DNA of 64,000 nucleotides, from contig NC_079167.1 of assembly GCF_947568905.1 (NCBI RefSeq), positions 43,400,001 through 43,464,000 of the forward strand. The letters run 5' to 3'. Origin of the DNA: Ostrea edulis. Taxonomy: Eukaryota. The notes below the pieces were generated by a model. It was not told the origin of the DNA and did not search any database. It saw only the letters and a program-made list of their open reading frames with translations. The translations under genes were made by a program, and so were the position numbers. Within the stretch, counting starts at the first letter, position 1, and each line of letters starts with the position of its first letter. This document shows, one piece after another, positions 2,065-51,383 of the stretch.

Positions 2065-2284
2065 TTACGGGTTAACTCTATAACTATGCATTTACATGTG
2101 AAATAACATCCAATGTGTAATTAAATACCGCAACAATGATTGACATTAAAGATACACCATAGGACATAAAAGGGGGGGGGGTGATCGTTACAAATAATTG
2201 TATTATGTTTCTAAAATAGATATTCTCTGTCGTAAATCCTCGACTGATGTTGACATTATTACTAAATCATCTGCATACATTAAG

Positions 2285-2588
2285 GTCTCTACAGCCCAGT
2301 AGCTAAGTACTTCGTTACTAGCTTGAAAATACGGATGTATATTTAATTGCTGTTATAAAATTTAGAAATTCATTTCAAAATTAAGGATTATCTCCCTCAT
2401 GCATAGCTCTTATCCTTGGACGAATTTGGCTCCATTTTTTTAGCACGCTGTTTTTGGCTATATTTTGATCTAAAACTTCATAGTTATTTCGGATTTCAAA
2501 CATTTCGGTTGAGCATCACTGAAGAGACATTATTTGTCGAAATGCGCATCTGGTGCATCAAAATTGGTACCGTATAAGTTTTACATTA
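2285..2588 (+). mobile_element. Non-LTR retrozyme-like element, sub-monomer copy
   Basis: Homologous to 34687-35091; ends at the same ATAAGTTTTACATT; flanked by direct repeat TACATTAAG (2276-2284, 2582-2590). Confidence 0.75.
2513..2556 (+). ncRNA. Minimal type I hammerhead ribozyme
   Basis: Stem I GCAUCA/UGGUGC, CUGAAGA, stem II GACA/UGUC, GAAA, stem III AU/AU capped by palindromic GCGC, predicted AUC cleavage after 2550. Confidence 0.85.
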
Positions 2589-29598: not shown

Positions 29599-32500
29599 GT
29601 AGCTGTTAAGCAACGAATCCATTAAAATGTATCTGGTTAGTAGAGGCTGGATAAATTAAAATAAAACCGAAACGCCCCCAAAGAAACTTGTCGTCCACTC
29701 TAAAGGTGTGTGAACGTACGGACCATACCTTAGACAAAGGACAGACTACCTGAACGGCTGTAAAAATAGCACTATACATTTTTGATATAACAGGTTTTTT
29801 TTCTTTTCAAAGCATTGTTTTGAAACCATATTTGATCCAATCTTATTAAGATTTATACCAATAACTCATAAAAATTCTTAGTTTCTTATCACAATTTTAA
29901 ATTCACTCTTTCCATTGAATAGTGTGACAATTTGAGAGCAAACAAAAGTATTTGCTAACCTATTATTTGATATGTTTAAAAATCGTAAAACTCCAGTAGC
30001 TGCGAATGAAAAGTTACCATTAAAACCATAGCCAGAAACTACAGCATTCAATTTCATATACATCCGACGAGAAAGGGTTTCATATACACCTGTACATCCG
30101 ACTAGAAAGGGTTTTAATTGATTATTTTGAAAAAGGATCATTTAAAAAAGAATAAAGTGAACTTTTCAATCGGTCAAATACTTCTCTCCACTATTCGTAA
30201 GTATCGTGGTCTTATAAAAGAATCGAAATGAACTACTTGTATTCTTACAAGTCCGATCTCTTTCGCTGAATATCCTGGGCACTTTATTTTACAGAATTTT
30301 CTCAACAATGTAACGCTGAAAAACAGAAATATCTACCGATCACTGTGATAATAATAAAATAATTAAAATGACACTATTAGAATGAAATCTTATATCAATC
30401 TGCTCGTGTATTTCAATTATTCTAATTTCATCGATTCTATCATTAATTAAGAGGTTTACTAATTGCGTATGTGCTGATTTGTATTGTATATATGTATGTA
30501 TCTTACATGTTCTCTACACTGATGTGAATTAGTTTATGAGAATAAAGTCCTTGTCATTGACCAATCCCCTTCGAAAAACTCTTTGTTCAAACACAAACGG
30601 ATATTGATGATACTAAACATCGAATTTTAAACTGCAAGTCTGACTAACATCAGCACGTATTTGTCTTTAACTTTCGAAGCCATCGAAATCCTAACATCTA
30701 ATGGTTTGAATTTTACTAACTGGCCGGAAGAAGAATTGATTTTTTGTGTGGATGAAGCGGTGAATGTCACTGAATTATAGATTGAGAAAATCATTTAACT
30801 TGAGTGCTGTGATATACCGGTAATTCATTACGATATACATACTCCTCTAGATCTGCTCATGCAACTTGGTTAGCGAAGGGTCCCAACACTATATTGTCAC
30901 AATACTCTCAAGCATCTTCAAATGAGTTGAAAAGGAACCGAAAAGTGCTAGCCAATACCTCCTAGATCCACCGATCTCATCCTCAAATAAGCGGAGCGGA
31001 TCCAAACAAAGATCTCTAGTCAAGGTTTATGATCTCCGAGATCCACTGATCTGTTTCAAATGAGTGTAGCGAATCCAAACCAAGATATCTCGCCAAGGGC
31101 TCCGAGATTCGCTAATATCATATTCAAATTTATAAATGTAGCAGATGTAAACAAAGATCTCTAACCAAGGTTTACGATCTCCGAGATCCGCTGATCTCAT
31201 CTCCAAATGAGTATAGCGGATTGGAACTAAGGTCACCAGCCAAAGGACCCCATTTCGCCACAATCTAATTAAAATCAGATTTCCCCTAACCGTTACATTG
31301 GAGAAGGAATTTGAGGTTATGTCATTGACCCCAGTCTCGTGAATAATTCAATAAATATTCGACCAATAACAATAGCTTGACAAAGAATCAAGGACCAATC
31401 AGGATTCATTATACTGAAGCGTATTCGGTTTGTAAGTTCACAAAAAATGGCGTCGATCCATGAAAAGATTATACAAATTCCAAATACCAACGTTAAAGGA
31501 AGAGCAAACGAAGATCTTAGATGTTAATACATCCATTATCGTTAAAATGTATTTTCTGTGGCGTTCTAACATCGCTCAGAGCCGCGGTGGCCGAGAGGTT
31601 AGAGCGTTCGCCCGCATGCGGAAGGCCGGGGTTCGAATCCCGGCCGCGACAGACCTAAGTCGTTAAAACAGGTAGTGACAGTTCCATCGCCAAACGCTCG
31701 GCATCTGGTGTGAATGTCATGGGTTCTCGGAGATTACCTTAAAAACGGATAACTCGTGTCACAGTAGGTGTGGCACGCTAAAGAACCCTCACTGCTCAAT
31801 GGCCATAAGCGCCGAGCATAGGCCTAAATTTGAAGCCCTTCACCGGTCTTGGTGACGTCTCCATATGAGTGAAATATTCTCTAGTGAGACGCTAAGCAAG
31901 ATACAAGCAATCAATCGCTCAGAGCCGTCGCCATCTTCGATTATTATTCTCCCGTGCTTCTCGGTAATTATTGACCTACCAAGTACGTTCCGATATAACA
32001 GCAAAACTTTCTTGTTCACGGAAGCTGTCATTTGGACTGTCAAAAGCATGACTGAGATTTTGTTAAGAAACTAATAAGATAAGATGAGATGAGGTTTTTT
32101 TTAGAGCAAACTTTATCCTTTGATATACGCAGAATCACTATGCTAGGCTTGCGGAGAGTTTATGCATATGTTTGTATTACATTTTAGATCAGTAGTTCAT
32201 TACTCCAAACAAACAAAAGAAAGTGCATCAACACTGCAACTATAGTACAAATTCTCTAAGTATTCAACATCGCTCTCTGGTTGAAGCTTCACTGAAAGCG
32301 ATAAGCTACCCTCTACTGAAATCTGAAGCACTCTTATCATTCAAACCGATCCCGATTTCATAGAAATTCTATGTTATGTGACTTTTGTGTGTGTCTTTTC
32401 AGATCAAATCCACACTGTACTTTGATTACGACGCCAAAAAACAGCGCGTGGAGCGTACGATGGAGAATGATGACGGATCGACATACAACATGACCATCTA

Positions 32501-34263
32501 TGTCGATTATCACCAGGTTTGTCAGCCAATCAATCAATCAATCAATCAACCAATAAGACCGCCAATAAATACAGAAAATATAAGGAGAAATATTCGGATC
32601 TTTTAGAAAAGTGAAACATTTCTCTATAGTGGAACAAGTTAATATCAAAACGTATTTCGTAAGCAATGTAGAAACGAAATGTAAGCCTTTCATTTCAACT
32701 AAGAAAAGTACAACACATGACTGTATGCTCATCTAATCATGTTGATTTATTTCCCCAGCAAGTAACACGCTCAATCGTTGATGGAAAGTGTTACGTCACC
32801 AATCTTCAAAACGCAGTAATGCAAGAACCATGCGTACCCGGTAAGTCTCTGACGTCATCACTAGTCGCTGATGTCATCACTCACTGAAATTCTTGGGGAT
32901 GTGTNNNNNNNNNNNNNNNNNNNNNNNNNNNNNNNNNNNNNNNNNNNNNNNNNNNNNNNNNNNNNNNNNNNNNNNNNNNNNNNNNNNNNNNNNNNNNNNN
33001 NNNNNNNNNNNNNNNNNNNNNNNNNNNNNNNNNNNNNNNNNNNNNNCCCATTTGAGAGATTTTTTCACTTATGAGGAGAAGTCTCCAGCTTTAGGTGATA
33101 CATGCCACATACACGTATAGTCTACGCATGCGCTCAAGGCCACGAGAGTTCTTTATCGTACCAATGTCCGCCGTCATATGGGACTTCCGTTTTTGAGGTA
33201 ACATCCGAAAGACACGTGATTTTCACTTCTTAATGCCGGGCTCTTGGTGAAACAACAGTCATTATTTAGGTCTAATGCAGCGCCAGAATAGAGAATTGAA
33301 CTCGGGATCTCGCGGTTACGGGGCGAGCGCCTAACTCATCAGCACACCGTGACTGGTCTTGTGATTAGCTTATCTCAGCAGGATTTGTGCATGGAGACGT
33401 TATGTAAAGATAAAAATGTAATTAGCAATGGCTATAAAACACAGATTGATATGAAAATTAAGGAAAGACCGTAGATGATTACTTCAATATCTTTGGAAAT
33501 TCTCTGATAAAAGTTTCCCTGCATTCGCAGCTATCTAATGTTATTGTTTTGATTTTTTACCAGCTGTTGCTACATTCGTGGGTACGCGCGTCCTGGGATC
33601 TGCCAACAATGGTGTCACAGTGAACTCGTTCTACGCCGACATGCAGAAAGCCGCTAACGTCACAATGAAGGTCTCCGTCACTGCTGACGACTGCACACCC
33701 GTGTCTGCTTCTTCTTATGGCGTCATAGGAGGAGGTAAGGTCAAAAGTTACTCACAAGAAATCAGTAAAGAAAATTGCAATCCCCTGACACATAAGAGGA
33801 GGAGGCGTTTTGATGCAATTGCTCCCAATCTGATATTTAGATGTATCTGATTTATTTTCATTTTTCATAGCTGTTGAGGAAATCACATATTTCTTCACCA
33901 ACCTACAATACAGCTTACCTCATCAAGTGTTCCACATACCAGCCGCGTGCCACGGAGTCCATGTGAGTATTAGTCAATGCTGTGTTACGATTGCATACAT
34001 TTTAAATGTTTAAACTGACACTATATATATAGATACCATCTCACGAACATCTATAACGTTAGTCATAACACATACTGTTATACTTTCATGTGATTTAGAC
34101 GAATTTGAATGGTTTATTAATGATTTTCATTAAACATATTATATAATATGATATAGTTTTGTGTCTTTACAAGTATACTATTTCCTTTTATTTTTAGGGT
34201 CCAGTCGTTGGAAGGGATGTCAAACTGCCAGTATATCTCCAAAGATTATTAAATGTGGAATAA
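28742..34263 (+). CDS. Ependymin-related protein C (225 aa, 6 exons)
   Basis: Exons 28742-28894, 32403-32516, 32759-32840, 33564-33734, 33871-33962, 34198-34263; GT-AG, 678 nt open; signal peptide, PCCC, LYFDYD, GKCY, EPC, DCTPV, FHIPAAC. Confidence 0.9.
31581..31913 (+). mobile_element. tRNA-derived SINE, full length, in EPDR-C intron 1
   Basis: A box TGGCCGAGAGG, B box GGTTCGAATCC (31630-31640), (CAAT)n tail, flanking direct repeat ATCGCTCAGA(GCCG). Confidence 0.88.
33047..33358 (-). mobile_element. Diverged copy of the same tRNA SINE family
   Basis: Reverse complement follows the 31581-31913 copy (head, body, TCTCC.CATA.GTGAAA 3' region); abuts an N gap. Confidence 0.65.
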
Positions 34264-34686
34264 ACTTATATTTCTATAGTTTACGAATTGTCTGCTTTGA
34301 TATAACTTGATGACTTGATGATAAAATGTTTTGGATATTATTATAGTTTCGAAACACAAAGCATTAAGATAGAATAAGAATGAATACATATATGTAAGAA
34401 TGAATACATATATGTACAAAAACAAATAGAAAGAGATGTTTTAGCCGGGTAGTTCATTTGTCCATTGCGGTTGTGATTTCGATACTCTTACAAAGTTTGC
34501 TGCAAATGTACTGCAAGTTTTCCGTAAGTTTGTGGCAAACAAATCATTATGGGACTAGTGACAGTGTGACAGACGTGCACCGCAATTTTTTCTTGAAAGA
34601 GACTTGAAACAGTGCACGAAAAGTTCCCATCTGATTAAAATCAGATCTTTGATCCACTCCGGTAATGTTATGTCACAGCTGTCAGA

Positions 34687-35091
34687 TTGTCGAAATGCGC
34701 ATCTGGTGCATCAAAATTGGTACCGTATAAGTTTTACATTACGACCCCTGGGTCGATGTCTCTGCTGGTGGACTGTTAGTCCCCGAAGGTTTCTACAGTC
34801 CAGTAGCTAAGTACTTTGTTACTAGCTTGAAAATACGGGTGTATGTTTAATTGCTGGGATAAAATTTAGAAATTCATTTCAAAATTAAGGATTATCTCCC
34901 TCATGCATAGATCTTATCCTTGGACGAATCTGGCTCCAGTTTTTTTGGCACTCTAGTTTTCCTCTTAGCTCTTACAAGTTTATTGTTATTTCAAATTTTC
35001 AAAAATTTCGGCTTGAGCATCACTGAAGAGACATTATTTGTCGAAATGCGCATCTGGTGCATCAAAAGTGGTACCGTATAAGTTTTACATT
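34687..35091 (+). mobile_element. Non-LTR retrozyme-like element, ~1.15 monomers
   Basis: 54-nt terminal direct repeat (34687-34740, 35038-35091); predicted cleavage sites after 34703 and 35054, 351 nt apart. Confidence 0.8.
35017..35060 (+). ncRNA. Minimal type I hammerhead ribozyme
   Basis: Identical to 2513-2556; predicted cleavage after C35054. Confidence 0.85.
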
Positions 35092-35821
35092 GCAAAAGTT
35101 CCCAACATTTTCTTGAATATTTACAATATGTAGAATCAAAACAGCTATATTCCACCAGAATGTTAAATAAACGTTTTCTGTAATCTGTTCTTGGAACAAC
35201 TTTTTGGAAAAGAATTCAAATTGTAGCAACTCATGAACAGTCCAAGAATTTCAATTTTTTATCTTTAATGATCAAGTTCAAATTAGATATTGTAATGATT
35301 TTCGAATCGATGAAGAATTTTTCAGGAACTTTGGGTGTAGTAGATTGTCTCCAGATTTCTGAGGAAAAGTACATGGTTGGAATGCGTGAATTTTGAATAC
35401 TGTAAACGTACTTTTTCCACGGGTTCATAAATCCACGGAATCACAATTTCTGTTTATTCCGCGGGTAGAAAATTAGGCGGATTTCTTAAAATTTGTGACC
35501 GCGTACATAGTGTAAATTAATACCGCGCGGAAAAAAGTACTTCTACAGTATATGTCATTCTTGTATGCAAATGCTGCTGAAATCAGTTGTTATGATGCAC
35601 ATATTCCTGTTCTGCAAAAGCCATACTTTTTAATATCTGTACATATACTTTAGATGATCATAGATACTCCTTTGTCATAATTGTATACACAATTCTAGTA
35701 AGAGCACCATCTGTATAGCATTGCTAGTTTAATAAGGGTTAAAAAACACACATTCATTTGACATAATTGAACTGAAAATGTCAAGATTCACCAATTTAAT
35801 TAAAACACAACCTGGCCTTAA

Positions 35822-43249: not shown

Positions 43250-44975
43250 CATCCTAAACTTTTTGTGTGAAGTATTTTGATATTCTACACTCAAATGCAA
43301 AAAGTTTGTGAGATGCTAAAGAAATGCAACATTCGAGAAGTTCAAAGCAGAGAGATAGTTCAACCTCAATTCTGCGAGAAAAAGGAGGAGAGAAGAGTCA
43401 ATTAGCACCTTAGAGAAAAAAAGAACAGCAATTATTTATTGCAAAGGAGAAGTTTTCCACTGACAAAAGTGAGAAGACTGGCCTGGAGAAAGTTTTTTTT
43501 TCAAAGGTAAAACTCATTTTGGGTTTCGTTTCAAGAAGTAGGTTTGACAGATCAACTGGAGACTCGCCTCCAGTTGCAGAAATTAGCCAAAGTAGGCTGT
43601 CGAATTATTTCTTATCATAGGGAGTGGATGAAAATTACATCCGACGAATGGGTTTTTAAAATAGTCCAAGGACTCAAGCTTGTGTTCTTAAAACATCTTC
43701 CAGCGACTAGAGTAAATATCACAAATGTACAAAATGTTGCTCAGAACAATGTATTTTAGAAGAAATAGAAAGTTTATTAGAAAAACAAGCCATAGAGGCT
43801 GTTCCCAAGACCCAGGAAGGTCAAGGATTTTAGAGCACCTTTTTTGTAGTTCCATAACGAGACGGAGGGTACCGTCCAATTCTCAATTTGAAACCGTTAA
43901 ATGTTTTTCTCCAGAATCAGCAATTCAAAATGGAATCTCTAAAGTCGATAATTCAGATTGGGTTGTAACAATAGACCTAAAGGATGCATATCTACATGTT
44001 CCAATTTATCCAGAGGACAAGAAATACCTTAGATTTTGCATATACAACAGGCATTATCAATTCAGGCGACAGCTCCATGAGTTTTCATAAAACTAATGGG
44101 GGCGATAGGAACGCATCTGAGAAGTCAACAGATCTTCATTTACATGTACTTGGACGATTGGTTTCTGAAAAATGCAGATCGAATGACCTTAATGCACCAA
44201 CTCTGTTATTATTTATGGATTTGGGTCTGGTGATAAATCAATCCTTGAACCAACTCAACCGATTACTTACCTTGGAGCGCTCTTTCTTCTCCATCATGGT
44301 ATGGTCTACCCAAGTTTGGATCGTTTCCACAATCTTTGTGGAATAATTTCAACCATGGTTACGGATTTCTTTATCCCAGCTCATACATTTCTCAGAATCC
44401 TTGGTTTAATGACAACCGGCATAGGCTTGGTCCCCTTTCCAAGACTCCAGATGCGTCAAATTCAATTCTTCCGTTCGTCCCATCGGTGTCCACATTTGGA
44501 CAGCCTGGGTCACAGTTGCAGTTCTTGGTCAAAACTCAAAGGTTAGGAAAGCCATGGAGACCTATCTTCATACCAGAGTTTAACACCTTTGCAACAGACA
44601 TCAGAGACTTGCTTTTGTGTCCATACAGATCACTAAAAATATATCTGGAAAGATCAAAGTCTTCTCGTGGTAATGAAAAGTGTTTGTTTTTAACTTACAA
44701 ATCAGGTATATAAGAACTAGCATCCAAAAATTAAGATCCATATTAAGATGGATTGTGTAAAATTTGTGTATCAACAGAATAGTGAGATCTTATCAAGCAT
44801 ACGCGAGCATGACACTAGACGAATGGCAACTGCATGGGCCCTTTTCAATCAAGCAAACAGTAGAAGAAATTTTACGGACAGCTCATTGGGCAACAGAAAC
44901 CATGCTTACTGCTTTCTACATGAGGGATGTTTCTCAACGAGAAGCTCGTTTTGCCAAGTTTTCAGTCCTTGACTA
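43250..44975 (+). mobile_element. Decayed DIRS1-type tyrosine-recombinase retrotransposon
   Basis: VGCRI...W..ITSDEWV, RPILNLKPLN, IDLKDAYLHVPI, YLDDW, CPYRSLKIYL, HDTRRMAT, AHW...FYMRD across several frames; internal deletions. Confidence 0.85.
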
Positions 44976-45145: not shown

Positions 45146-47631
45146 GTGAAATCTTTGTTTCCCAATACCCAAAGACGAAAACGCAGTCATGGACATCGTT
45201 CATATAAAAGACCAAGTATAAATGATGTCACGTTTGATTCACTTTTGCCTTACGTCAACAGACAATTAGGTCCACATCACATTCGTACAAAACTTTACTC
45301 TATTCCATTGAGAGTTTTACACACGTTATTTGAAGAAGCTATGGCTAATCTATACTTGGATTTTTCAACACCTGAATAAAGACTGAACTCTATGATTATG
45401 AATGTTGCCTACCACAGGCTCTATAAACCAGCACGGACCATGGATGATATTCCTTCCAAATCATGCCGCCAGTTCCTTAAGCTCAAATTTACAAACAAAG
45501 GAATAGATGCCGTCAACATAAGCAACATTCTTCGTCATAAAAGGGTTGAGTCGTGTATTCCAACTTATTTCAAGTTCAAGTCTACACCCTGTATTTCCTA
45601 CAGCTATACTTCTACTATTGCATCCAAACTTTTTAATTATAAACAAACTTTGCAGTGCCTAGATATAGACCATCTTATACGTAATCCACCAACATGTTCT
45701 TGTTCTTCATCTTCTTTCAACTATAGTCCAGCTGGACATGTCATTACTGGTGATGTTGATATAGTTGAAAATGAGGACCTCAAATCACTTATTCTTAAAG
45801 GTCCTAAATACAGAGAACCTCGATCTTTTAATTGGCGACAGAACTTCATCTCTATTATGAGTTCTGTCGAAGATTATGCCAGACGATGGGCTAAATATGA
45901 AAAAGAAGAACTTGATACATTGTCAGAATGGGTTAAAAGCATAAGAGGGATATTGAAATCCCGCATTAGACATATGAAAACAAAAGTACGTACCATCTAT
46001 CCTTCTGTGTTTAGTAAACCAGAAGTGATAAAAGAATTAGATAGGTTACATGAGGAATATGTTTTGGTTCCAGCTGACAAAGCAAGTAACAACATTGTCT
46101 TTGTTTGTAAGGCTCATTATTACAACTGTATTTTAAACGAACTTGGCATTAATTCCACTTTTGGTAATCATACTTATACTCCAACTGCCCTTTCAAAATA
46201 TGAAATTCTTCAAAACCATGCTTCAGTTTTAGACACATTTAATATTCCAGTCAGTGGGTCGAATGAATATGAGTTACCGTACCTATACTGGATTCCTAAA
46301 CTACATAAAAACCCTTACAAACAAAGATACATTGCTGGATCCAGTAAGTGCTCTACCAAGCCCCTATCTTTGCTCCTCACGAAAATGTTAACAGCTGTGA
46401 AGGAGAAACTTCAAACTTACTGTGCAACTACATATGCCAGAAGTGGTGTTAATTAAATGTGGATTCTAAAAACTTCTAAAGAACTTTTGGTAAACTTGAA
46501 ATCACAGAATTTTCCCCAAATCAATAACATAAAAACCTATGACTTTTCAACACTATACACGACCATTCCTCACGATAAATTAAAGACTAGACTTTTTGAC
46601 ATCATAGACAGTTTCTTCTTCAACAAAAACGGAAAACGGAAATATTCATATCTAGTGATCAGTCATTCAAAAACTTACTTTGTTAAACACCACTCTGATT
46701 CCACGCACAAGTACTCTGAAGTTAAAATAAAAAATATGCTAGAGTTCCTCATTGACAATATCTTCGTGGTCTTTTGTGATCAGGTCTTCCAACAGTCTGT
46801 TGGAATTCCCATGGGCACGAATTGTGCTCCTTTGTTAGCTGACCTGTTTTTATATTCATATGAAGCAGAATTTATTCAAAAATTTCTACGTGAGAAGAAA
46901 AAATCTCTCGTTGTGGCTTTCAATTCGACTTTTAGATATATCGATGACGTTTTGTCTATTAACAATGATAGCTTTCATTCATATGTCGATTTGATATATC
47001 CCTGTGAGCTCGAAATAAAGGACACCACAGAGTAGTCCACTTCTGCTTCATACTTAGATATTTTATTGAAAGTAGACATTAACGGCAAACTGACAACTCA
47101 ACTGTATGACAAACGGAATGATTTCAGCTTCTCCATCGTCAACTTCCCATATTTGTGTAGCAATATTCCATTATCACCTGCATATGGTGTTTATATATCT
47201 CAACTAATTCGATATGCAAGAGCTTGTTCTGCGTATAGTCAGTTTTTAAATCGAGGTAAGCTACTGACAAACAAGTTGATGGTACAGGGATTTCAACAGT
47301 CTCGATTGAAGTCAGCATTTCGAAAATTCTATGGTCGTTATAACGATCTAGTTCGTCAATACAACCTCGCATTGGGTCAAATGCTGTCTGACGTGTTTCA
47401 TACCGATTGTTAAGCCGTTCTTGGCACACTGATTTTGACTGCGGATAACTCCGTTTACCTGATCAGGATATAGGGCTCACGGCGGGTGTGACCGGTCAAC
47501 AGGGGATGCTTACTCCTCCTAGGCACCTGATCCCACCTCTGGTGTGTCCAGGGGTCCGTGTTTGCCCAACTATCTATATTGTATTATTTATAGGAGTTAT
47601 GAGATTGATCACTGTTCGTTATCTTCACTTT
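45146..47631 (+). mobile_element. Naiad-type Penelope-like retroelement, 5'-truncated
   Basis: One reading frame 45146-47413 with three nonsense codons; RKRSHGHR, CxC linker (TCSC...GHVITGD...KGPKYRE), WIPKLHK, YDFSTLYT, GIPMGT, FRYIDD; no C-terminal endonuclease; ~220-bp 3' UTR. Confidence 0.85.
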
Positions 47632-50276: not shown

Positions 50277-51383
50277 ATGGCAGAAAACAGCACGTATGCC
50301 GAGCACTGCTACGCGTGGTTGCGCGAGGATCTCTCGGACACCGTCACGCTAGATGAAGCTAACGCCAGATTTCAGGCCAGACATGTAGGAGGAATCGTCT
50401 TCGTTACGTTACTCAGTGCGATCGGCGTCATCGGGAATCTGCACGTCCTGGTGATGTTCTTACGTCACTACAAACGTTCATCTTACCGGACCTACATCCT
50501 GTGTCTGGGTGTGCTGGACATGATAAATTCCACCATCAGTATGCCGCTAACAGTTTTCTACCTCAGCCATCCTCTAAATTACTTCAACGACTTTTTCTGC
50601 AAGATCTACCGGTTTCTCTTATATTACATCAGCATTGCGTCTACCTTTATCTTGGTCATCATTGCAGTTGATCGATATAGAAAAATCAATACGCCACTTA
50701 AACGGCAATGGACGGAGAAGCAGACCTTCCGGATCTGTATGGCTGGATTGGTGTTTGGTTTAGTATTTGCGTGGCCGGCACCAGTTTTGTACGGAGGTAG
50801 TTCCGTGAATTTACCGGTGAATAACTTGACAGGACACCGATGTTACATAGAGGACAAGTTCAAACATACGTCATATACCGCTGTATTTAACATCGTTTTG
50901 ACGTCGTTATTTTTCCTGATTTTCACCATTCTTATAACATTGTATCATTTTATCTGGAGAGCTGTGAAGAGCCACGTAGATTTTTCTTTACAACATCAGA
51001 CGGGGTCACTGTCCTCCCTTGCGAATTCTATGTCTGTGGGGCTGGATAAACTGAAGAATTCCACGAAAGACGCAGATAAAACCGTCAGGAACCACAAGTA
51101 CCTACAGCTCCGCCGGACCACCATCACGCTCCTGTCGGTTACCATTGGTTACTTGTTATCCGCGTTTCCTCATCACTGCTTAGCGCTGGTCATCTTTGTT
51201 TTTCCGGACGTGGAATGCACAATGTCGTTTGGCGCCAGTGTCGTGTTTTACACATTTGTGTGGATATTTCTCGTCAATAATGTCATCAACCCAATTATCT
51301 ATTCCTTTTCTGATGTCCGATTTTTGAAACAACTAAAATTATCTTACGGCTGTGGAAATTCGGATGATATTGAATCCATTTGA
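50277..51383 (+). CDS. Intronless class A (rhodopsin-like) GPCR, peptide-receptor-like orphan, 368 aa
   Basis: Seven hydrophobic segments; GN in TM1, LGVLD in TM2, C-DRY in TM3, ECL2 Cys, SAFP in TM6, NPIIY in TM7; N-terminal NST sequon. Confidence 0.93.
   Translation: MAENSTYAEHCYAWLREDLSDTVTLDEANARFQARHVGGIVFVTLLSAIGVIGNLHVLVMFLRHYKRSSYRTYILCLGVLDMINSTISMPLTVFYLSHPLNYFNDFFCKIYRFLLYYISIASTFILVIIAVDRYRKINTPLKRQWTEKQTFRICMAGLVFGLVFAWPAPVLYGGSSVNLPVNNLTGHRCYIEDKFKHTSYTAVFNIVLTSLFFLIFTILITLYHFIWRAVKSHVDFSLQHQTGSLSSLANSMSVGLDKLKNSTKDADKTVRNHKYLQLRRTTITLLSVTIGYLLSAFPHHCLALVIFVFPDVECTMSFGASVVFYTFVWIFLVNNVINPIIYSFSDVRFLKQLKLSYGCGNSDDIESI

What the first reader, a model, noticed from the sequence alone, without database searches (positions are those of the whole stretch)
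34687..35091. Hammerhead retrozyme longer than one unit: footprint of a 351-nt circular RNA
A complete minimal type I hammerhead (35017-35060) and the 3' half of a second (cleavage after 34703) bracket a 351-nt non-coding monomer. The very short stem III with a palindromic UGCGCA is the form known from Penelope-type ribozymes that cleave as dimers. Non-LTR retrozymes producing small circRNAs are known in some animals, including mussels. A 405-bp insert beginning mid-ribozyme and ending at a fixed point fits reverse transcription running more than once round a circle. The mobilising RT is not evident here, since Naiads are reported to lack canonical hammerheads. It lies ~420 bp downstream of the EPDR-C stop, on the same strand.
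Basis: partly seen in the sequence, partly recalled or inferred. Interest (0 to 1): 0.8.

Follow-up and report, generated by a model that had tools for sequence, protein, structure and literature searches.

The report
Oyster hammerhead retrozyme insertion, 1.15 units
This 405-base stretch is one copy of a very abundant small mobile element of an oyster-like genome that carries a self-cutting hammerhead RNA and is a clear relative of the mussel "retrozyme" already shown to make RNA circles, so it is a well-supported new member of a known kind and not a new system.

Summary
A 54-nt direct repeat (34687-34740, 35038-35091; spacing 351) brackets the unit. Bases 35017-35060 form a complete type I hammerhead that matches Rfam Hammerhead_1 end to end (31.2 bits, just under the cut-off of 34).

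The element belongs to a family with about 17,500 hammerhead halves in this 895-Mb genome. It is homologous and collinear with the published mussel retrozyme Mg353. All 13 hammerhead pairs are kept, four through changes on both sides.

In 54 other copies the 3' end is fixed 37 nt past the cut site. The 5' ends vary and lengths run from 131 to 873 nt. Units within one insertion share private variants. So every copy came from an RNA whose hammerhead site was intact: a religated circle or an uncut multimer. The sequence cannot tell which, and the public RNA data could not show circles.

- The insert bounded by the target duplication is 464 nt. It carries a 57-nt filler taken from a small transposon arm.
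- The focal copy has only one complete ribozyme, so it is a footprint, not an obvious source.

The mobilising reverse transcriptase was not found. The scan had already noted this family many times elsewhere in this genome.

The parts
34687..35091 (+). Retrozyme insertion of 1.15 units (405 nt; unit positions 1-351 plus 1-54)
   Evidence: Copies elsewhere are 91-94% identical to it.
35017..35060 (+). Complete type I hammerhead, cut predicted after C35054
   Evidence: RF00163, 31.2 bits, model 1-45/45; 13/13 pairs kept against the mussel motif. Sequence read.
34687..34709 (+). 3' half of an upstream hammerhead (part of helix II, GAAA, palindrome, cut site after 34703, 3' strand of helix I). It lacks CUGAAGA and the 5' strand of helix I.
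34704..35054 (+). The 351-nt unit between the two cut sites, which is the predicted monomer
   Evidence: Folded as a circle: -76.0 kcal/mol, z -0.83 against shuffles.
35055..35091 (+). 37-nt tail between the scissile bond and the fixed 3' end of the element
   Evidence: 3' ends of 54 other copies fall at unit positions 52-59.
34630..34686 (+). 57-nt filler at the 5' junction: one arm of a small palindromic MITE (34629-34676) plus 10 nt
   Evidence: The junction with the retrozyme is unique in the genome.
34619..34629 (.). Upstream copy of the 11-nt target-site duplication AAAAGTTCCCA
   Evidence: Relatives of the host repeat carry this stretch once, uninterrupted. It scored above all mismatched-flank controls.
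35094..35104 (.). Downstream copy of the target-site duplication
34748..34772 (+). Non-ribozyme block conserved with mussel retrozyme Mg353 (23/25)
   Evidence: 1 match, 0 expected in 100 shuffles.
34887..34912 (+). Second block conserved with mussel Mg353 (23/26), collinear with the first
2282..2588 (+). Second, 5'-truncated copy of the family in the window (307 nt; starts at unit position 100, ends at 55). It belongs to a sister subfamily with the same hammerhead.

Best explanation
The stretch is one insertion of a non-autonomous, non-coding retroelement of the non-LTR retrozyme kind. It is homologous to the mussel retrozyme Mg353.

Inferred from the mussel work: multi-unit transcripts of the family are cut by the hammerhead after the C of AUC. 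Two motifs probably pair through the palindrome AUGCGCAU to do this. The 351-nt monomers are then closed into circles by a host RNA ligase.

Shown here from the copies: new DNA copies are made by target-primed reverse transcription. It starts at a fixed point 37 nt downstream of the scissile bond and runs towards the 5' end of the RNA. It crosses the intact hammerhead site and stops at variable points, sometimes after more than one unit. The template was therefore a religated circle or an uncut multimer, never the cut linear monomer.

The focal copy ran 405 nt (1.15 units). It picked up 57 nt of unrelated filler at its 5' junction and made an 11-nt target duplication. It holds only one complete ribozyme, so it is a footprint rather than an obvious source of circles.

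The enzyme is most likely a Penelope-like RT/GIY-YIG protein. This is inferred and no partner was identified.

My odds: membership of the family about 0.93. That the template of this copy was a circle rather than a linear multimer about 0.5.
For: - Motif and repeat.
- Abundance: 17,542, 14,587 and 6,437 hits for three 24-nt probes, reversed controls 0.
- Homology to the experimentally studied mussel clone: two collinear blocks of 23/25 and 23/26. The hammerhead is 36/48 identical, with 13/13 pairs kept, 4 pairs changed on both sides, 1 on one side and none in the core.
- Mussel RNA circles and self-cleavage are published (PMC7229834).
- Fixed 3' end and scattered 5' ends, lengths 131-873 nt, in 54 other copies.
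- Units inside one insertion share 33 derived variants, against 5.0 +/- 2.7 with random partner copies; 0 of 2000 permutations reach 33.
- 57 of 75 complete hammerheads in held copies are intact, and 12 of 54 copies hold two or more.
- The dimer fold forms an 8-bp helix III.
- Family contigs occur in an RNA-seq run and in a metatranscriptome.
- The genome has thousands of Penelope-like ORFs (5,838 first-look candidates).
Against: - No RNA ends, no circular junction and no strand information could be read, because all runs were contigs.
- The predicted circle is not more structured than shuffled sequence (z -0.83).
- Most copies lack a recognisable target duplication.
- No autonomous element with the same 3' module was found.
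- The Rfam score is just below the gathering threshold.
- Shared variants between neighbouring units could also come from later gene conversion.
Confidence: 0.85

Rival explanations
1. Same element and same enzyme, but the template was a linear RNA and not a circle. It would be an uncut multimeric or terminally redundant transcript that starts in the upstream hammerhead region and ends at the fixed 3' point. This mirrors the pseudo-LTR organisation of autonomous Penelope-like elements. The 1.15-unit form would then be the full-length element and shorter copies its 5' truncations.
For: Penelope-like elements, which are not thought to be circles, insert as partial tandems with a 30-40 bp tail (PMC8557442). 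Many 5' ends lie at unit positions 329-351 and 1-12, which gives lengths of 391-430 nt. On C1:0-6.6 Mb, counted by eye, 21 of 45 exact mid-unit probes have the upstream hammerhead half and 17 have the obligatory downstream one. Only about 5% reach the next unit's probe. That looks like a full-length class.
Against: The 5' ends are spread over about 50 nt and are not sharp. The pile-up is not significant in the small held samples. A quarter of copies are longer, up to 2.5 units. In mussels most of the RNA is circular and little is linear or multimeric (PMC7229834).
Confidence: 0.35
2. The 54-nt terminal repeat arose at the DNA level, by slippage, unequal exchange or partial tandem duplication of a one-unit insertion. 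It would then say nothing about the RNA template.
For: Tandem repeats are prone to such events. The two 54-nt copies differ at only one base.
Against: Dozens of independent copies at unrelated loci have more than one unit with the same fixed 3' end and different 5' ends. The target duplication brackets the whole 1.15-unit insert plus filler.
Confidence: 0.03
3. The hammerhead-like motif is an inactive relic, and the family is an ordinary SINE-like repeat with no ribozyme step.
For: No cleavage data exist for this species. The Rfam score is under the threshold. Every insertion was copied from RNA that was not cut at the site.
Against: All differences from the mussel motif are compensatory or lie in free positions, and none touches the catalytic core. 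The mussel motif cleaves in vitro. 76% of complete motifs in decaying copies are still intact.
Confidence: 0.04

Closest known systems
Mussel non-LTR retrozyme (Mytilus galloprovincialis clone Mg353; Cervera and de la Pena 2020, PMC7229834)
   Same: - Unit size 351 against 353 nt, low GC, no ORF.
- Type I hammerhead with 6-bp helix I, 4-bp helix II and a short palindromic helix III.
- Thousands of copies.
- Sequence homology in three collinear blocks.
   Different: - The host is an oyster-like genome with about 17,500 hammerhead halves, against about 5,000 motifs reported for the mussel.
- 12 of 48 hammerhead positions differ, all compensatory or in free positions.
- Circles and cleavage are shown for the mussel only.
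- The fixed 3' end, the 5' truncation spectrum and the variants shared between units were read here from the oyster copies. I did not find them described in the parts of the paper I read.
Penelope-like elements with hammerheads in their pseudo-LTRs (Cervera and de la Pena 2014, PMC4209133; Craig et al. 2021, PMC8557442)
   Same: - Partial-tandem insertions.
- A hammerhead close to the 3' end followed by a short tail.
- Variable or absent target duplications, and some insertions in (TA)n.
- Likely the source of the enzyme.
   Different: - The retrozyme has no ORF and is ten times shorter.
- Its hammerhead is the canonical metazoan form, not the min-HHR.
- The one canonical 787-aa element examined here (L079) has only a hammerhead-like core with a rudimentary helix II and an unrelated 3' sequence.
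Newt satellite 2 and axolotl retrozymes
   Same: Units of about 330-350 nt with type I hammerheads that need the dimer form for efficient cutting. [quoted passage not shown]
   Different: No detectable sequence relation was sought or seen. They are vertebrate, mostly in long tandem arrays, whereas the oyster copies are dispersed and short (1-2.5 units).
Plant LTR retrozymes
   Same: Non-autonomous, hammerhead-processed, with circular RNA as the proposed transposition intermediate.
   Different: Type III hammerheads inside LTRs, a primer binding site and polypurine tract, 4-bp target duplications, mobilised by Gypsy elements. None of these features is present here.

Membership tests
Hammerhead ribozyme, type I (Rfam RF00163) | Conserved core CUGANGA ... 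GAAA ... UH, with helices I, II and III in type I topology | tested here: met
   The sequence shows the core and helices. cmscan aligns model positions 1-45/45 to 35017-35060. 13/13 pairs are kept in oyster and mussel.
Hammerhead ribozyme, type I (Rfam RF00163) | Score at or above Rfam's gathering threshold (34 bits) | tested here: not met
   31.2 bits, E 1e-6 on 71 nt. No hit in the window-wide scans. The shortfall is small and the alignment is full length.
Hammerhead ribozyme, type I (Rfam RF00163) | Self-cleavage after H17 | not testable with these tools
   Needs in vitro transcription. The homologous mussel motif cleaves at about 0.1 per min (PMC7229834).
Metazoan non-LTR retrozyme | Short non-coding repeat of 150-450 bp with low GC, carrying a type I hammerhead, present in many copies and partly in tandem | tested here: met
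   Unit of 351 nt, GC 0.38. About 17,500 motif halves. Copies of up to 2.5 units.
Metazoan non-LTR retrozyme | No LTR, primer binding site, polypurine tract or ORF; target duplications, when present, longer than 4 bp | tested here: met
   The target duplication is 11 nt here and is not recognisable in most other copies. No ORF of at least 35 aa was listed over the left edge of the element, and the unit has no protein-family context.
Metazoan non-LTR retrozyme | Homology to an experimentally characterised member | tested here: met
   Mussel Mg353 blocks match at 23/25 and 23/26 with 0 expected by chance. The hammerhead is 36/48 identical with compensatory changes.
Metazoan non-LTR retrozyme | Expressed as unit-length linear and circular RNA | tested here: inconclusive
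   Family contigs occur in one RNA-seq run and one metatranscriptome. Contigs show no ends, strand or circles, and DNA carry-over cannot be excluded.
Non-autonomous partner of a Penelope-like element | Shares its 3' module or hammerhead with an autonomous element of the same genome | tested here: inconclusive
   The three autonomous copies fetched do not share it, nor do the RT fragments in the window. Identical hammerhead halves 3,684 nt apart on C1 could not be fetched.

The most novel reading that the evidence does not exclude
The usual full-size insertion of this family may be about 1.12-1.2 units rather than one unit or a long array. The 5' ends would gather inside the upstream hammerhead just after one complete turn. 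That is what a reverse transcriptase would leave if it copied a closed 351-nt circle once, ran into its own starting point and stalled after displacing a few tens of bases. If a full census confirms one stop zone after the first turn only, this would be genomic evidence that animal retrozymes are copied from circles. In addition, non-ribozyme blocks are conserved at about 90% identity between oyster and mussel. This points to a constrained RNA function or to horizontal transfer.
Probability: 0.3. Interest if true: 0.6.

Novelty: new member of a known kind. Interest (0 to 1): 0.3.

Why it matters
It extends the hammerhead retrozymes studied in mussels to an oyster-like genome. The family there makes up roughly half a percent of the DNA.

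The comparison of the two bivalve lineages gives a natural covariation test of the ribozyme.

The copies also record how they were made. The fixed start lies past the cut site, and units within one insertion share variants, so the template still had an intact hammerhead site. This narrows the models for how these elements move.

It is not a new kind of system, and the scan has already noted the family many times in this genome.

Tried and rejected
- Rfam at the gathering threshold and at E up to 10 on 1.2 kb found no hammerhead. Only the 71-nt scan did. The genome-wide RF00163 search returned nothing usable.
- RNA evidence: two run searches gave contigs only. Laying four runs showed family contigs but no ends, no back-joints and no strand.
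- Search for the mobiliser:
  - GIY-YIG hits and three fetched Penelope-like loci did not share the retrozyme's 3' module.
  - tblastn of two Penelope-like proteins against all held loci found only unrelated fragments.
  - The retrozyme 2.1 kb downstream of the 973-aa ORF in L080 sits against another abundant repeat and is not part of that element.
  - The RT fragments in the window have no hammerhead and no similarity to the retrozyme.
I did not try to get round this.
- Apparent target duplications in L045 and L055 turned out to be host tandem repeats.
- A 5'-transduction reading of the 57-nt filler was rejected, because the filler-retrozyme junction is unique in the genome.
- The pile-up of 5' ends at 391-430 nt is not significant in the held samples.
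- Identity within an insertion is barely higher than between insertions. Only the shared-variant count separates them.
- A full computed alignment with the mussel clone was left out, because that sequence has no reference here.

Full report
**Observation**

The window holds a 54-nt direct repeat at 34687-34740 and 35038-35091. The copies are 53/54 identical and start 351 nt apart.

Read, bases 35017-35060 contain every element of a type I hammerhead:
- helix I, GCAUCA with UGGUGC, 6 pairs;
- CUGAAGA;
- helix II, GACA with UGUC, closed by a 5-nt loop;
- GAAA;
- the self-complementary octamer AUGCGCAU;
- C35054 as the cleavage nucleotide.

The upstream end of the repeat unit carries only the 3' part of the motif. 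Its cut site lies after 34703.

Rfam's Hammerhead_1 model aligns to exactly 35017-35060 over its full length, at 31.2 bits (gathering score 34) and E 1e-6 when 71 nt are searched. The window-wide and 1.2-kb scans missed it.

A minimum-energy fold of the 44-nt core keeps helices I and II but not the 2-bp helix III. Two cores together form an 8-bp helix III and reach -27.3 kcal/mol, against -7.8 for one.

**The family**

The stretch is one of thousands of copies. The genome is 895 Mb in 52 contigs, and earlier notes of the scan call it an oyster. Three 24-nt probes, each allowed up to 2 mismatches, gave these counts:

| Probe (unit positions) | Hits |
|---|---|
| 3' half of the hammerhead (3-26) | 17,542 |
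| 5' half of the hammerhead (326-349) | 14,587 |
| Mid-unit (75-98) | 6,437 |

The reversed control patterns gave 0 hits each.

The hammerhead module is shared by at least two subfamilies that differ upstream of it. The focal copy belongs to the rarer one. A second copy, 5'-truncated and of the other subfamily, lies at 2282-2588.

**How copies end**

I analysed 54 other distinct copies from two sets of loci. One set was chosen by similarity to the whole element. The other was chosen by similarity to its last 120 nt.
- Every copy ends at unit positions 52-59, in ...TTTTACAT(T).
- The 5' ends fall all over the unit, and lengths run from 131 to 873 nt.

The fixed end lies 37 nt downstream of the scissile bond. 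So each copy longer than 37 nt spans that bond. The template was therefore not the cut linear monomer. It was either a religated circle or an uncut multimer.

Of 75 complete hammerheads in these copies, 57 still have an intact core, helices and palindrome. Twelve copies hold two or more intact motifs. The focal copy holds one complete motif and one 3' half.

**Are successive units of one insertion from one template?**

Plain identity hardly separates units within an insertion from units of different insertions, because most differences are private and arose later. Derived variants shared by the two units of one insertion do separate them. There are 33 such variants, against 5.0 +/- 2.7 when the partner unit is taken from a random other copy, and 0 of 2000 permutations reach 33.

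This fits one RNA molecule read more than once, or a homogeneous multimer. It argues against joining of unrelated monomers. Later gene conversion between neighbouring units cannot be excluded.

**A possible stop zone**

Many 5' ends lie at unit positions 329-351 and 1-12, which gives lengths of 391-430 nt. The focal copy, at 405 nt, is one of these.

I compared the listed exact hits on C1:0-6.6 Mb by eye:
- 21 of 45 mid-unit probes have the upstream hammerhead half 72 nt before them.
- 17 have the obligatory downstream half.
- Only about 5% of probe sites have another mid-unit probe one unit upstream.

So most copies that reach position 98 go on past the upstream cut site, and few go much further. 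In the small held samples this pile-up is not statistically significant: scan statistic P 0.3-0.7, binomial 0.09. I treat it as a lead.

**The junctions of the focal copy**

The flanks belong to an old repeat with subunits of about 55 nt. Its relatives carry ...AAAAGTTCAC-AAC... once, uninterrupted. In the window AAAAGTTCCCA stands at 34619-34629 and again at 35094-35104. This 11-nt duplication is a target-site duplication.

Between the two copies lie:
- 57 nt that are not retrozyme (34630-34686);
- the 405-nt retrozyme part;
- GC.

The first 47 of the 57 nt are one arm of a small palindromic MITE that is common in the genome. The filler-retrozyme junction occurs nowhere else in the genome. 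It is therefore filler or a template switch at this insertion, not a transduced flank.

Most other copies show no duplication above the control level. Two apparent long ones are host tandem repeats.

**Relation to the known mussel element**

The supplement of Cervera and de la Pena 2020 gives the genomic clone Mg353.
- Its 25-mer around CTGGGTCGATG... matches 34748-34772 with 2 mismatches.
- Its 26-mer ending in CCTCATGCATAGAT matches 34887-34912 with 3 mismatches.
- None is expected by chance for either block.
- The two blocks and the hammerhead stand in the same order, at similar distances from the cut site, in units of 351 and 353 nt.

The 48-nt hammerhead regions align without gaps and are 36/48 identical. 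All 13 pairs are standard in both species. Four pairs differ on both sides, one on one side, and the remaining differences lie at N7 and in loop 2.

For the mussel element, self-cleavage in vitro, abundant circular RNA in tissues and circularisation by RtcB are published. The same paper proposes that a primed circle is copied into tandem cDNA and names Penelope-like elements as likely helpers. A 2026 preprint reaches the same view for vertebrates.

**RNA evidence here**

Only assembled contigs were on offer. Family contigs occur in two runs of unknown type, in one RNA-seq run and in one marine metatranscriptome. Depth is confined to the element and falls to zero in the 3' flank. No ends, strand or circular joints can be read from contigs, so expression is suggested and circles are untested.

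The predicted 351-nt circle of the focal unit is not more stable than shuffled sequence (-76.0 kcal/mol, z -0.83).

**The mobiliser**

The genome has many Penelope-like ORFs: 1,102 first-look GIY-YIG candidates and 5,838 candidates for a 787-aa RT-EN protein. That 787-aa element has, about 130 nt after its stop and about 50 nt before its 3' end, a hammerhead-like core. The core has a 6-bp helix I and a GCGC palindrome but only a rudimentary helix II, and its sequence is unrelated to the retrozyme.

No fetched element shares the retrozyme's 3' module. Pairs of identical hammerhead halves 3,684 nt apart on C1 hint at an element of autonomous size.

**Verdict**

The identity as a hammerhead retrozyme is well supported and is now tied by homology to the mussel element.

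The reading as a footprint of a circle is consistent with the data but not singled out by them. A linear multimeric or terminally redundant template, as assumed for Penelope-like pseudo-LTRs, explains the same anatomy.

This is a new member of a known kind. Earlier notes of this scan list the family many times in this genome, and one follow-up reached the same classification.

Noticed in passing
window 34629-34676: One arm of a tiny palindromic MITE: two arms of about 48 nt, whole element about 110 nt, apparent 8-bp target duplications in other copies. It is common in the genome, sometimes in tandem or nested arrays. Another retrozyme copy (L036) sits inside such a MITE.
   Followed up: partly
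window 34560-35230 (outside the insert): The host sequence is an old repeat with internal subunits of about 55 nt (GAAACAGTGCACC-AGAAGTTCACCACAA-CTTTTTCTTGAA...). About 12 diverged copies (70-80% identical) exist in the genome.
   Followed up: partly
G000 C1:4965929/4969613 (both minus strand); C1:2818970(+)/2822653(-); C1:2836706(+)/2840390(-): Exact copies of the 24-nt hammerhead half lie 3,683-3,684 nt apart, once in direct and twice in inverted orientation. This may be an autonomous-size element with the same ribozyme. It could not be fetched.
   Followed up: no
L079:2990-5624 (minus strand), also L081: A young Penelope-like family with a 787-aa RT plus C-terminal GIY-YIG ORF and many 99-100% identical copies, some in tandem with a 3,717-nt period. 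It is inserted in (TA)n and has a hammerhead-like core (CUGAGGA ... GAAA GCGC UU, 6-bp helix I, weak helix II) near its 3' end.
   Followed up: partly
L080:5200-5762: A very abundant unrelated repeat (12,710 first-look candidates, copies about 82-85% identical) abuts a retrozyme copy exactly at the retrozyme's 5' end.
   Followed up: no
window 35013-35090, from laid contigs: In an RNA-seq run the 78-nt hammerhead-plus-tail module (1 mismatch) occurs in contigs whose sequence on both sides is unrelated to the retrozyme. Summed depth over this module is 5-200 times that of the rest of the unit. The module may be shared with other elements, or the contigs may come from very short copies.
   Followed up: no
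window 34375-34414: Perfect tandem duplication of a 20-nt unit (TAAGAATGAATACATATATG).
   Followed up: no
window 31581-31651: tRNA gene on the plus strand (Rfam tRNA, 34.3 bits, above the gathering score of 29), GC 0.72.
   Followed up: no
window 43725-44713 and 45392-47035; 50277-51383: Two degenerate reverse-transcriptase fragments (RVT_1, below threshold) without a hammerhead, and an intact-looking rhodopsin-type GPCR ORF of 368 aa (7tm_1, E 6e-31).
   Followed up: partly
window 33578-33720: An exon with an ependymin domain match (PF00811 positions 50-99, E 2.9e-6) on the same strand, upstream of the retrozyme. The retrozyme may lie in or just after this gene's 3' untranslated region.
   Followed up: partly
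focal unit against 54 other copies: The focal unit differs from the commonest base at 13 of 351 positions, mostly transitions, so it is not a recent insertion. Several other copies also share 5' ends at unit positions 144-148 and 147-161, a second small cluster.
   Followed up: partly
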